DNA of 64,000 bases from Phallusia mammillata (lineage: Eukaryota): the NCBI GenBank assembly GCA_965637545.1, contig OZ281501.1, positions 6,510,001 through 6,574,000 of the forward strand. Direction: 5' to 3'. Made by a program: the position numbers and the translations under genes. Numbering within the stretch: position 1 is the stretch's first letter; the number at the start of each line of letters is the position of its first letter. The notes under the pieces were generated by a model. It ran no database searches and was not told where the DNA came from. It worked only from the letters and a program-made list of their open reading frames with translations. Below are positions 58,401 to 61,904 of the stretch, piece after piece.

Positions 58401-61400
58401 GGTAGTTCGCAGGTTATTTTGTAATGGTCGAAACAGGTAAAAATGCATCTATTGTGTTTTATCACATAAAACGAGGCATTATTCACAAGCAAAATAGTAG
58501 TACACACTGCTTTAATATTTTTAAACTTTCTAATTTAGTGTTATTTTCTTTGTGGAACGTTATGAAGAGAAACAAAAAAATGAGTGGTTTGGAATCCCAT
58601 ATTTGTCAGCGAGTTTAATGCCAGGAAAGACTTTGACCAGTCTATTTTACCAACTGTTTATTTATGCACTTTAAAGATAATGTATGAAGAGTATGTTTAA
58701 AGACAGGATTTAAAACTGCTGTGTGTAAGGTAACAGGGACTTTCAGTTGGTTACGTGCAAAAATGTCAAGAAATTGGAAAACTTTCTAGGGTACCAGTGA
58801 CTTTCACAAATTTTTACAAAATGAAGTCTCTAAAACCAGAAGCCTTAATTTTTTTCAAAAAGTTTGGGAGCTGTATTGTTATTCACTTTTTTATCAAATC
58901 TTTGTCTATTTAAGCTGGAAATACAACTTATTTTAAATATTAGGACCCACCAACTGGTAGAGACCAGGAAGAAGCACCTCGAGGGGTTGAGGTCCTTGAT
59001 CCATCCTTGTTCAAACAGAGGGGAAAAAGAGCCAGTGATAAAAATCGTGATAGAAGAAAAATTTACCAATGCAGAGAATGTGCGTTTTACAGTCACCGAC
59101 ATAGCAACTTGATAAGACACATGAAAGTAAGTGAAATGAAATGATAACTGCAATACCTTTTCTCTGGTATATGACTTTTAATGAATAATATATAAATTGT
59201 GCATTTTTAGAGAAAATGTTGCATAATTGCTGGCCATGTAAATGTTTCTAAAAATATAAACATTGCTTCTCTGGCATTTCTCACAAATGACAAAGTTTAA
59301 CTACATTGTATTATGGTGCTATTCTGTAGATTACAAGTTGTTTTTTGAATACCTAACCATAAAAACGCTCTTGACATTTTTTCCAGATCCATACCAATGA
59401 AAGACCTTACAAGTGTCATCTTTGTGATCGAGCATTTCGGACCAACACCTTGCTTCGCAATCATATTAACACTCACACAGGTCAGTATACATAAGTAAAC
59501 CAGCAATAATTCTTTTCTGTACATCACTATTGTTTGTATCATAGGTGTCAAGCCCTACAAGTGTGCGGTGGAAGGTTGTGCGATGGCGTTTGTTACAAGT
59601 GGTGAACTGACTCGCCATACTCGCTACATACACACACATGAAAAGCCATTCCGATGCACACTATGTGATTATGCTAGTGTGGAGATCAGTAAATTGAGAA
59701 GACATTTTCGATCCCATACAGGAGAGAGACCATACACATGTGATGAATGCGGGTAGGTACTTGTTGTACCTAATTTTTTTTTATTGCACCCAATTTGTTA
59801 CTTTTTTCCTTCCTGCATTTTGCTGGTTCTCCCGATCGTTTAAAACCGGTCAGTTGCACAAACTGACCTGAGCTTTAAATTTACGTACTCATGCCCTGCT
59901 AACATATGAAACTAGTGTTTAAAAGGGTGCCCAAGAACAAAAACTAATGATTTTTCAAATTTATTACATTGTGAAAAGTCACGAATTCTGGGCCTGTACA
60001 GCTTAATACACCTCTGGTGATGTAAGGGACCTTGTAAAGCTAAAACTAGAGTAGAATTTAGAATGTTTGTGATGTCACAATGCACTGATGTGAGATGCTC
60101 GGTGCTCCACCAAACAGAACATTTGTAATTTTGGCCCATCCCTATTGTCCAACATGTTTTGGTTGTCTGCATATAACAACATGTCCCAAATAATGTATTA
60201 TGTTGCGACATTGTTTTCATGTGCTTAAACTGTATGTTTATGGTTTGTAGCAAGGCATTTGCTGACAGCTTTCACCTTAAGCGTCACAGAATGTCTCACA
60301 CTGGTGAAAAACCTTATGAATGTCCCGAATGCCATCAACGCTTCACACAACGAGGCAGTGTTAAAGTAAGTTATTGCAAATTATTGATGAGAGAATCATC
60401 CAATGAAGGGTCTGTTATCTGAACTAACCTTTTATATTTATTCATTTTCCAGATGCACATTATGCAGCAACACACCAAAACAGCTCCTAAATTCAAGTGT
60501 GAAATCTGCAAAACCCTGCTCGGCCGAAAAAGTGACCTAAACGTACACATGAGAAAACAGCATGCATTCCAGGTTTGACTTGCACTTGTACAAATCAGTT
60601 CCATTTTGAAACAGATCAACATTATTCTTTTCGCACTTTCTAGGAGGCACCAACTCAGTGCAGATATTGTGATGAATTGTTCCACGATCGGTGGAGTTTG
60701 ATGCAACATCAGCGGACACACAGGAGTTGTGGCACACGCTTCCGAGCTGAATCTGCTGTAAGAATACCAACTGATTCATGAAAAGCATGATTTATTGTTT
60801 CATGGTTGAATGAAATTATATGGTGGCAAGTGGCAACACCAAAGTGCTTTGAAATAACTGTGCCTAAATGCAGCTGTAAAAAATGTGTAACATAAAAAAT
60901 CTTTGTTGGTCGACTGCTGACATAAATGGTAGTCTTCGACTTTAAATATACTTATCTGTTATCCATATCAAGCTTTGCAATGTTTATAGCAGCCTAAGAA
61001 ACGAAGACGCTTGGATGAAGACGACGACAACTATGGATGGAAAACAAGTCCAGAAGAAGAGGAATATGAACAAAGTAAAACTACAGTTTAATACAATGAC
61101 TTTTACATTCAAACACACCAGCACCGGTGGCATATTTTCCTTAGCTCTTACAATAAATTCAGGACCATTATATTAAAACACATATGTTTTGACAAATGAA
61201 TATAAGGGCAATCTCATGTATAATTATAAAATTATCGAGCCATTACATGACAAGTAAGGTACAGATGGTGCACATTGTTTCAAGCTGTGAGGTCTCTACA
61301 TTAAATGTATGGACCAGTGTTTCTTCATTTTAAACTGTCTGCTGCTTACTTGTAATCTAAAGTGCTTCAACACCAAATTTTGCATGTAGTATGCCCAGAT

Positions 61401-61904
61401 GCAGTATATCCAGTGGTGGGATTCAAGTTTTTTGTCAGTCGGTTCTATCACAAAAGTCATAATTTTGAGGCTGTTTATTTGACAGTAAATCCATTGATAA
61501 CCAGTAATTCTAGCGGTTCGCTGCTCTCATAAAATTTCATCAGGCGGTTCTGTAGTGGTGCGAACCGGCTGGATCCCACCATTGAATGTATCTATACCAG
61601 ACCCAAGTTGAACTACTTCAAACAATTGTGGATTGACAACTAAATTTTGCCAGACATGACCTTGCAACTGATCGAAACATTACCCCATTAAGCACTGTAG
61701 CTAAATTTACCACATGTATGACATTGTCTATCTTTTACTTCATCATCAGTGATCCTTGAGGGGGAGGACGGTGATGTGCAGCGTGTGACAGTTTATGTTG
61801 AAGAAGAAGATGAGGAAGGAGCAGATGAAGATGGAGAGGAATTTGCTATCATGGAAAATGTAACTGGTGAAGAAGCGAAGGACGGAGAAACTATAGCTAC
61901 CTAA
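55375..61904 (+). CDS. CTCF: CCCTC-binding factor (CTCF) with 8 C2H2 zinc fingers, 15 coding exons, ~666 aa
   Basis: Exons 55375-55488, 55743-55943, 56231-56380, 56521-56667, 56775-56883, 57119-57244, 57303-57382, 58944-59126, 59387-59480, 59545-59752, 60251-60365, 60453-60572, 60644-60757, 60990-61074, 61750-61904 (2001 nt). CTCF-diagnostic fingers: [98 protein letters not shown]-terminal SVYEF motif. Confidence 0.95.
55743..55943 (+). CDS. CTCF: CTCF coding exon 2 (acidic)
   Basis: Open Glu/Thr-rich frame, donor GAA|gtaaga; alternative acceptor at 55755 possible. Confidence 0.72.
56231..56380 (+). CDS. CTCF: CTCF coding exon 3
   Basis: tttttag|[17 protein letters not shown]...EAQQ|gtaaaa. 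Confidence 0.8.
56521..56667 (+). CDS. CTCF: CTCF coding exon 4
   Basis: [30 protein letters not shown]...AMQ|gttggt. Confidence 0.82.
56775..56883 (+). CDS. CTCF: CTCF coding exon 5
   Basis: LSMGDKVP...GNET G|gtatgc. Confidence 0.8.
57119..57244 (+). CDS. CTCF: CTCF coding exon 6
   Basis: [24 protein letters not shown]...FLED. Confidence 0.8.
57303..57382 (+). CDS. CTCF: CTCF coding exon 7 (YxF motif)
   Basis: ...[12 protein letters not shown]|gtactt. Confidence 0.85.
57481..57898. mobile_element. hAT-type MITE in CTCF intron
   Basis: TIR TAGTGATGGGACG / CGTCCCATCACTA; flanks gtatatgt/gtatatta; GTACTC/GTATCG repeats. Confidence 0.85.
58944..59126 (+). CDS. CTCF: CTCF coding exon 8 (ZF1)
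   Basis: [21 protein letters not shown]|gtaagt. Confidence 0.93.
59387..59480 (+). CDS. CTCF: CTCF coding exon 9 (ZF2)
   Basis: [31 protein letters not shown]. Confidence 0.95.
59545..59752 (+). CDS. CTCF: CTCF coding exon 10 (ZF3, ZF4)
   Basis: [49 protein letters not shown]. Confidence 0.96.
59850..60144 (+). mobile_element. MITE family B, 5'-truncated copy in CTCF intron
   Basis: ~180 nt similarity to 63817-64000; right TIR GGCCCATCCCTA. Confidence 0.7.
60251..60365 (+). CDS. CTCF: CTCF coding exon 11 (ZF5, ZF6)
   Basis: [38 protein letters not shown]. Confidence 0.95.
60453..60572 (+). CDS. CTCF: CTCF coding exon 12 (ZF7)
   Basis: [40 protein letters not shown]. Confidence 0.95.
60644..60757 (+). 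CDS. CTCF: CTCF coding exon 13 (ZF8)
   Basis: [38 protein letters not shown]|gtaaga. Confidence 0.9.
60990..61074 (+). CDS. CTCF: CTCF coding exon 14 (NLS, acidic)
   Basis: TAGCAG tandem acceptor; (Q)[27 protein letters not shown]. Confidence 0.8.
61411..61584 (-). mobile_element. hAT-type MITE, family A copy 2 (inverted)
   Basis: CAGTGGTGGGATTCA ... GGATCCCACCATTG; internal match to the 3988 copy in reverse; TSD agtatatc/aatgtatc. Confidence 0.75.
61750..61904 (+). CDS. CTCF: CTCF coding exon 15 (acidic tail, stop)
   Basis: [31 protein letters not shown]...IAT*; AATAAA near 62145 and 62186. Confidence 0.8.

What the first reader, a model, noticed from the sequence alone, without database searches (positions are those of the whole stretch)
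58944..61904. CTCF with only eight zinc fingers (ZF9-11 absent)
Seen: fingers matching CTCF ZF1-8 are followed by [13 protein letters not shown], which looks like a decayed start of ZF9 (vertebrate HKNEKRFKCDQC), then directly an NLS (PKKRRR), an acidic tail and a stop. I found no C2H2-encoding exon in introns 60758-60989 or 61075-61749. Established: canonical CTCF has 11 fingers; ZF3-7 read the core motif, ZF9-11 read the upstream motif, and the ZF10 region contributes RNA binding. Inference: this lineage has a core-only insulator protein. I cannot say whether this is already reported for the taxon.
Basis: partly seen in the sequence, partly recalled or inferred. Interest (0 to 1): 0.78.

Follow-up and report, generated by a model that had tools for sequence, protein, structure and literature searches.

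The report
Sea-squirt CTCF with eight zinc fingers
This is the single CTCF gene of the sea squirt Phallusia mammillata; it really encodes only fingers 1-8, but that protein is already deposited and the eight-finger tunicate CTCF is already described for Ciona.

Summary
The window (Phallusia mammillata, contig C8) carries a 15-exon CTCF gene, with the CDS at 55375-61904 on the + strand. Spliced contigs from four independent studies join the ZF8 exon (60644-60757) to 60990-61074 and then to 61750-61904. They show no other exon, and one contig runs from ZF1 into the 3'UTR.

- **No hidden fingers.** No C2H2 motif lies in the two introns. Fish and hagfish ZF9-11 find nothing there, and only generic poly-ZF background elsewhere in the 240-Mb genome.
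- **No paralogue.** ZF3-4 scores 153.9 bits at this locus and 54.6 bits at the next best place.
- **Already deposited.** All eight zinc-finger and tail exon peptides are exact, ordered substrings of UniProt A0A6F9D9I8 ("CCCTC-binding factor", P. mammillata, 662 aa).
- **Shared across tunicates.** CTCF of Ciona, Clavelina and Styela, and 18 unnamed tunicate-like clusters, all have exactly eight fingers. Vertebrate CTCFs show eleven with the same test.
- **ZF9 relic.** A conserved R-[FY]-[KR]-x-D stub after ZF8 aligns with the first residues of vertebrate ZF9.

It is not new. A 2023 preprint states that tunicate CTCF has fingers ZF1-8. A 2026 preprint confirmed this in Ciona robusta by 3'RACE and tested its function. 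This scan had not noted the gene before on other DNA. Verdict: a real feature that is already known, of low interest.

The parts
55375..57382 (+). CTCF N-terminal coding exons 1-7: 55375-55488 (ATG at 55375), 55755-55943, 56231-56380, 56521-56667, 56775-56883, 57119-57244, 57303-57382
   Evidence: tblastn of the deposited Phallusia CTCF P0183. GT..AG joints of exons 5-7 in spliced contigs. Bounds read from the sequence. All 15 exons sum to 1989 nt, which is 662 codons plus the stop.
57371..57379 (+). Y-E-F, in the context SVYEFQ: the YxF-type motif by which vertebrate CTCF binds cohesin
   Evidence: Translation. The 2026 preprint states that the YxF motif is present in sea squirt CTCF. Its function was not tested here.
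58944..59126 (+). Exon 8: pre-finger linker and the first part of ZF1 (ZF1 = 59070-59126 plus 59387-59392)
   Evidence: joints 57382>58944 and 59126>59387.
59387..59480 (+). Exon 9: end of ZF1 and ZF2 (59414-59476)
59545..59752 (+). Exon 10: ZF3 (59562-59633, with C-x4-C spacing), ZF4 (59655-59717) and the start of ZF5 (from 59739)
   Evidence: Best PDB match is human CTCF residues 327-381, 94 bits. It scores 153.9 bits in its own genome against 54.6 for the next locus.
60251..60365 (+). Exon 11: rest of ZF5 (to 60299) and the start of ZF6 (from 60321)
60453..60572 (+). Exon 12: end of ZF6 (to 60473) and ZF7 (60498-60563)
60644..60757 (+). Exon 13: ZF8 (60659-60721) and the 12-residue stub [12 protein letters not shown] (60722-60757), a relic of the ZF8-ZF9 linker and the first strand of ZF9
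   Evidence: PDB: human CTCF residues 467-496. Killifish ZF7-8 hits only this place in the whole genome.
60758..60989 (+). Intron 13 (232 nt), the place where ZF9-11 exons would be expected. It holds none.
   Evidence: Joint 60757>60990 in all 4 runs. No C2H2 motif. No ZF9-11 similarity.
60990..61074 (+). Exon 14: basic cluster PKKRRR (60993-61010) followed by an acidic stretch. There is a minor NAGNAG acceptor at 60993.
61075..61749 (+). Intron 14 (675 nt). It contains an interspersed repeat (about 61375-61561) and no coding exon.
   Evidence: Joint 61074>61750 in all 4 runs, with very high depth and many loose ends over the repeat.
61750..62203 (+). Exon 15: acidic C-terminal tail, stop TAA at 61902-61904, and the 3'UTR. 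Contigs end at 62178-62203, and an AATAAA lies near 62146.
   Evidence: The tail peptide is exact in P0183 residues 613-662.

Best explanation
This is the single-copy CTCF orthologue of the ascidian Phallusia mammillata. Its gene ends the finger array at ZF8. An ancient internal loss removed the coding sequence from the first zinc ligand of ZF9 to the end of ZF11. What remains after ZF8 is a short linker and strand stub (R-F-R-x-E), then a basic cluster, an acidic tail and the stop.

Shown here:
- the gene structure;
- the spliced mRNA;
- the absence of any ZF9-11 coding sequence in the locus and the genome;
- identity with the deposited protein;
- the same architecture and breakpoint in all other tunicate CTCFs that could be retrieved.

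Inferred:
- ZF3-7 still read the CTCF core motif, because the recognition helices of ZF3, 4, 6 and 7 are nearly those of vertebrates, while ZF5 differs more.
- The protein cannot read the upstream motif module and lacks the ZF10-associated RNA-binding region of vertebrate CTCF.

From the literature on the Ciona orthologue, not tested here: it binds CTCF-like core motifs in mouse cells, does not build TADs, and yet rescues the lethality of CTCF loss. This suggests that it works mainly as a sequence-specific transcription or chromatin factor rather than as a loop-extrusion anchor.
For: - **Splicing.** Spliced contigs of 4 runs from 4 studies give GT..AG joints at every predicted intron, including 60757>60990 and 61074>61750. 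X10 record 6 (1309 nt) runs from 58983 to 62178 with no extra exon.
- **No hidden fingers.** No C2H2 motif lies elsewhere in the window.
- **No paralogue.** A search of the window's own genome with ZF3-4 gives 153.9 bits at this locus and 54.6 bits at the next best.
- **No ZF9-11 in the genome.** Killifish ZF9-11 gives only generic poly-ZF hits (best 51.6 bits, 38% identity, none near the locus). The control with killifish ZF7-8 hits only exon 13. tblastn of fish and hagfish ZF9-11 against the window hits only the existing finger exons.
- **Deposited protein.** Exon peptides are exact, ordered substrings of P0183, UniProt A0A6F9D9I8, 'CCCTC-binding factor', Phallusia mammillata.
- **Other tunicates.** 22 tunicate or tunicate-like CTCF clusters, including Ciona, Clavelina and Styela, have exactly 8 fingers, and 4 vertebrate CTCFs have 11 by the same regex. 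Genomic contigs of two further relatives (L011, L020) show the same 3' structure.
- **Orthology.** Colinear 61% identity to lungfish CTCF ZF1-8, ending at the ZF9 start.
- **Literature.**
Against: - The runs are contigs guessed to be RNA, so a rare isoform would not be seen.
- The genome search scores only the best 150 of about 2,500 C2H2 candidates, so a strongly decayed ZF9-11 remnant elsewhere could be missed.
- DNA-binding specificity and function were not measured for Phallusia, and the functional statements rest on preprints about Ciona and Styela.
- ZF5 contact residues differ from those of vertebrates, so the core motif may differ in detail.
Confidence: 0.93

Rival explanations
1. Annotation or reading artefact: ZF9-11 exons exist in the introns or downstream and were missed.
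For: Fingers split by introns escape a simple motif scan; ZF1, ZF5 and ZF6 were missed by the regex for this reason.
Against: Transcript contigs from four studies join 60757>60990>61074>61750 with nothing between them. A single contig spans ZF1 to the 3'UTR. tblastn with fish and hagfish ZF9-11 finds nothing in 60758-62500. The next gene starts at about 62511.
Confidence: 0.02
2. This is a truncated paralogue, and a full 11-finger CTCF sits elsewhere in the genome.
For: The genome holds thousands of C2H2 candidates: 2673 and 2566 in the first look.
Against: No other locus scores above generic poly-ZF level with ZF3-4, ZF7-8 or ZF9-11. Every tunicate CTCF retrieved has 8 fingers.
Confidence: 0.02
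3. The gene is not a CTCF orthologue but another poly-ZF protein. NCBI names the Styela homologue 'ZBTB24-like' and the Ciona one merely 'zinc finger protein'.
For: The automatic names of the Styela and Ciona homologues. Pfam sees only generic C2H2 families.
Against: There is finger-by-finger colinearity with vertebrate CTCF at 61% identity, E=2e-106. The best PDB matches are CTCF. The fish CTCF ZF7-8 query hits only this locus. A YxF motif lies in the N-terminus. UniProt names the protein CCCTC-binding factor.
Confidence: 0.02
4. The loss is private to this assembly or individual: a deletion or a mis-assembly.
For: None found.
Against: RNA contigs from four studies agree. The independently deposited protein is identical in this part. 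The same breakpoint is seen in Ciona, Clavelina, Styela and the metagenomic relatives.
Confidence: 0.01

Closest known systems
Ciona intestinalis / C. robusta CTCF (NP_001104593; P0185 here)
   Same: It has eight fingers equal to ZF1-8 and the same stub (HRSCGQRFRSDD against [12 protein letters not shown]). It also has a basic cluster, an acidic tail and YxF in the N-terminus. The eight-finger count is published and was confirmed by 3'RACE.
   Different: It is a different genus. The C. robusta RACE primer differs at 6 synonymous sites from the window. The tail sequences and N-terminal lengths differ (634 against 662 aa).
Vertebrate CTCF (11 fingers; for example lungfish P0262, killifish P0226, hagfish P0255; human structures 7W1M, 5T0U, 5YEL)
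   Same: ZF1-8 are colinear at 61% identity. The ZF3, 4, 6 and 7 recognition helices are nearly identical. YxF is in the N-terminus, and the gene is single-copy and ubiquitous.
   Different: The tunicate protein lacks ZF9-11. ZF3 has C-x4-C instead of C-x2-C spacing, and the ZF5 helix differs. The C-terminal tail has no detectable similarity. By the literature, it has no loop-anchoring activity.
Sea urchin HpCTCF (9 fingers = ZF2-10) and Trichinella CTCF (10 fingers = ZF1-10)
   Same: These are other bilaterian CTCFs with a reduced finger number and a conserved central block.
   Different: The losses are at other positions. Sea urchin lacks ZF1 and ZF11, Trichinella lacks ZF11, and tunicates lack the whole ZF9-11 block.

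Membership tests
CTCF (CCCTC-binding factor) orthologue group | Tandem C2H2 array that is colinear, finger by finger, with CTCF ZF1-8 | tested here: met
   BLASTP of P0183 346-581 against lungfish CTCF 302-534: 61% identity, E=2e-106. PDB phmmer maps the exons to human CTCF ZF3-4 and ZF8.
CTCF (CCCTC-binding factor) orthologue group | Conserved recognition helices of the core-motif fingers ZF3-7 | tested here: met
   The finger strings are listed side by side and aligned. ZF3, 4, 6 and 7 are nearly identical, and the ZF5 helix differs at several positions.
CTCF (CCCTC-binding factor) orthologue group | Eleven fingers, including the ZF9-11 upstream-motif module | tested here: not met
   There are eight fingers only. 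The count is not strictly defining: published sea urchin and Trichinella CTCFs have 9 and 10 fingers.
CTCF (CCCTC-binding factor) orthologue group | Single-copy gene and reciprocal best match | tested here: met
   It is the only CTCF-like locus in its own genome. Killifish CTCF ZF7-8 hits only this locus. After the tunicate proteins, the named relatives of a full-length tunicate-like query are mostly vertebrate CTCFs, with generic poly-ZF proteins interspersed.
CTCF (CCCTC-binding factor) orthologue group | N-terminal YxF motif that binds cohesin | tested here: met
   SVYEFQ at 57371-57379. Only its presence was tested; binding was not.
CTCF (CCCTC-binding factor) orthologue group | Binding to the CCCTC-type core motif, and insulator or loop-anchor activity | not testable with these tools
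   Published for the Ciona and Styela orthologues only. The Ciona orthologue bound CTCF-like core motifs in mouse cells without forming TADs, and the Styela orthologue failed to rescue loops or insulation in human cells.

The most novel reading that the evidence does not exclude
The truncation is one ancient event at the base of tunicates. It has the same breakpoint inside the first strand of ZF9 in every lineage, including unnamed planktonic ones. The R-[FY]-[KR]-x-D stub that survives after ZF8 is kept by selection because it still does something, for example a DNA-backbone or partner contact. The held papers state the eight-finger count for Ciona. They do not state a pan-tunicate shared breakpoint or a conserved relic.
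Probability: 0.4. Interest if true: 0.4.

Novelty: already known. Interest (0 to 1): 0.2.

Why it matters
A chordate lineage that has lived for hundreds of millions of years with ZF1-8 only is a natural deletion experiment. It bears on which parts of CTCF serve its essential regulatory role and which serve loop anchoring.

That point is already being exploited. Two 2026 preprints test Ciona and Styela CTCF in mouse and human cells.

This window adds only modest value. It shows that Phallusia has the same architecture. It shows that no remnant of ZF9-11 survives in the locus or the genome. And it shows that the breakpoint and a short ZF9 relic are shared across all tunicate CTCFs that could be retrieved.

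Tried and rejected
- **Big HMMER search.** The search of protein representatives with the ZF3-4 exon was swamped by long poly-ZF proteins. The four hits I opened (P0023, P0040, P0045, P0111) were not CTCF.
- **Tail exons.** PDB phmmer of the two tail exons found nothing meaningful, so I do not claim homology of the tail to the vertebrate C-terminus.
- **Possibly human contigs.** P0166 led to L014-L016. Their finger peptides are identical to vertebrate or human CTCF, and P0166 occurs in 88 blocks, so I take them as possibly human contamination. I had run one motif scan and one tblastn on them before seeing this. After that I did not use, save or compare them. L029 (a vertebrate-like 70% exon match) was not opened.
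- **Dead-end contig.** P0161 led to L018, a non-human vertebrate contig that ends just after ZF3 and was of no use.
- **Paper not held.** Heger et al. 2012 (PMC3491479) is not in the library.
- **Species test.** I asked whether the window is Ciona robusta, using the published 3'RACE primer. There are 6 synonymous mismatches, so it is not.
- **Joined model left out.** Exons were searched one by one by reference. The full-length comparisons used the deposited protein P0183 that a tool returned.
- **Tree.** The ML tree separates the 8-finger proteins from vertebrates at 100/100, but deep tunicate branches are unresolved and the unnamed clusters cannot be placed taxonomically.
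Full report
**What is there.**
Reading the sequence and translating exon by exon gives eight GT-AG exons between 58944 and 61904 on the + strand. They encode eight C2H2 fingers, then [13 protein letters not shown], a basic cluster (PKKRRR), an acidic tail and a TAA stop at 61902-61904. The gene is larger than the finding. Seven upstream exons start at an ATG at 55375. The 15 exons sum to 1989 nt, which is 662 codons plus the stop. The N-terminal part carries SVYEFQ, a YxF-type motif.

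**Is it CTCF, and which fingers?**
phmmer against PDB chains puts the ZF3-4 exon on human CTCF residues 327-381 (94 bits) and the ZF8 exon on residues 467-496. The deposited full-length protein (see below) aligns colinearly with lungfish CTCF over ZF1-8. Identity is 61% over 236 aa, with E=2e-106. The alignment stops at RFRAE/RFKCD, the first residues of ZF9. Pfam sees only generic C2H2 families, as it does for lungfish CTCF.

**Are ZF9-11 hidden somewhere?** Four tests say no.
- **Motif scan.** A six-frame C2H2 scan of the whole window finds fingers only in the known exons, plus one chance hit at 17019.
- **Transcripts.** Contigs of four runs from four different studies were laid on 56700-62300. 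They show GT..AG joints at every predicted intron. These include 60757>60990 and 61074>61750 in all four runs. One contig (X10 record 6, 1309 nt) runs from 58983 to 62178 through all finger exons, both tail exons and the 3'UTR. The only variant is a NAGNAG acceptor at 60993 in two runs. These are contigs guessed to be RNA, and the intron-skipping itself shows that they derive from spliced transcripts. Rare isoforms cannot be excluded.
- **Local similarity.** tblastn of killifish and hagfish ZF9-11 against the window cross-matches only the existing finger exons. Nothing appears in 60758-62500.
- **Whole genome.** In the 240-Mb assembly, the ZF3-4 exon finds only this locus at CTCF level, 153.9 bits against 54.6 for the next. 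Killifish ZF9-11 finds only generic poly-ZF arrays (best 51.6 bits, 38% identity, none near the locus). The positive control, killifish ZF7-8, hits exactly one place, exon 13. One limit applies: only 150 of about 2,500 candidates are scored, so a badly decayed remnant could escape.

**Which organism, and is the protein known?**
The Ciona robusta 3'RACE primer printed in a 2026 preprint encodes the same peptide (ISKLRRH) but differs from the window at 6 synonymous sites. The window is therefore not C. robusta.

A metagenome scan with the ZF3-4 exon returned L021, an intron-free contig with a 603-aa stop-free CTCF-like frame. Used as a query by reference, L021 retrieved named tunicate proteins. 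P0183 is UniProt A0A6F9D9I8, 'CCCTC-binding factor', Phallusia mammillata, 662 aa. All eight finger and tail exon peptides of the window are exact substrings of it, in order and abutting, and so are two of the three N-terminal exon peptides tested. The third differs by a residue.

**How wide is the trait?**
With one regex, 22 tunicate or tunicate-like clusters have exactly eight fingers over the same 224-residue span. Four are named (Phallusia, Ciona intestinalis, Clavelina lepadiformis and Styela clava) and 18 are unnamed clusters from Logan or JGI. Catfish, killifish, hagfish and lungfish CTCF show eleven. Genomic contigs of two further relatives (L011/L012 and L020) show ZF8 followed by tail exons and no further finger.

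A tree separates the eight-finger proteins from vertebrates at 100/100 support. It does not resolve deep tunicate branches, and the unnamed clusters cannot be assigned to taxa. The three ascidian orders are represented by my own knowledge of their taxonomy.

**The ZF9 relic.**
Aligning the ZF8 region shows vertebrate H-KNEK-RFKCD against several tunicate forms: [40 protein letters not shown] and H-RTTG-RYKPD. An R-[FY]-[KR]-x-D stub sits where ZF9 begins. The position of the first zinc-binding Cys holds A, S, I or P instead. The stub is degenerate in the Styela group. Homology of the basic and acidic tail with the vertebrate C-terminus could not be shown.

**How it probably works.**
- **Shown:** a single-copy, expressed CTCF orthologue with ZF1-8 and a YxF motif.
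- **Inferred:** from the near-identity of the ZF3, 4, 6 and 7 helices, it reads a CTCF-like core motif. Without ZF9-11 it cannot read the upstream module, and it lacks the ZF10-linked RNA-binding region. This rests on established knowledge of vertebrate CTCF and was not tested here.
- **From the literature:** the Ciona orthologue binds CTCF-like core motifs in mouse cells, with some preferences of its own. It forms no TADs but rescues the lethality of CTCF loss. Styela CTCF fails to restore loops in human cells.

'Core-only' is therefore reasonable. 'Insulator' is unproven.

**Novelty.**
- Watanabe et al. [quoted passage not shown]
- bioRxiv 10.64898/2026.10.19.759930 confirmed the reduced number in C. 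robusta by 3'RACE.
- No held paper mentions Phallusia CTCF specifically, but the protein is deposited.

I rate the finding as already known. The small additions here are the absence of any remnant in the genome and the shared breakpoint and relic across tunicates.

**Housekeeping.**
- Contigs L014-L016 look like vertebrate, possibly human, CTCF. I set them aside after one scan made before I recognised this. L029 was not opened.

Noticed in passing
window 60990-60993: NAGNAG alternative acceptor. Two of four runs (X5, X17) also carry a minor joint 60757>60993, which would drop the Gln codon at the start of exon 14.
   Followed up: partly
window 61375-61561 (last CTCF intron): Contig depth is very high (800-2400) and many loose ends diverge here in all four runs. 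This looks like an interspersed repeat that is transcribed at many other places, not an exon of CTCF.
   Followed up: partly
window 57448-58008 (intron 7): A second repeat-like stretch, with high depth, many variant letters and non-canonical joints in the contigs.
   Followed up: no
window 59853-60040 and 63815-64000: Two copies of a roughly 190-nt interspersed element, one in CTCF intron 10 and one in the next gene. They begin ...GTTGCACAAACTGACC... and end ...CTGGTGA[TC]GTAAG... (read).
   Followed up: no
window 59562-59633 (ZF3): The tunicate ZF3 has C-x4-C spacing (CAVEGC) where vertebrates have C-x2-C. The two-residue insertion is present in all named tunicate CTCFs seen.
   Followed up: partly
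window 55755-55943 and 57119-57244: There are a few amino-acid differences between the window and the deposited Phallusia protein in the N-terminal exons, for example D against N in exon 2 and I against V in exon 6. These are presumably polymorphisms.
   Followed up: partly
P0152 (561-nt marine metagenome contig): A tunicate-like CTCF fragment with two consecutive ZF3-like fingers (MAFVTNGELTRH... then MEFVTSAELTRH...). This may be a finger duplication in an unknown species.
   Followed up: no
G000 contigs C2 (about 5.9-7.3 Mb, 13.1 Mb) and C3 (many places): There are very large clusters of poly-C2H2 genes. The first look found about 2,500-2,700 candidates, with many near-identical tandem copies, for example C3:7553420, 7562463, 7576215, 7589967 and 7601914.
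   Followed up: no
window 62511 onward: The next gene on the + strand starts about 300 nt after the CTCF transcript ends. Its first exon begins MGSTGS..., so Gly2 is a possible N-myristoylation site.
   Followed up: no
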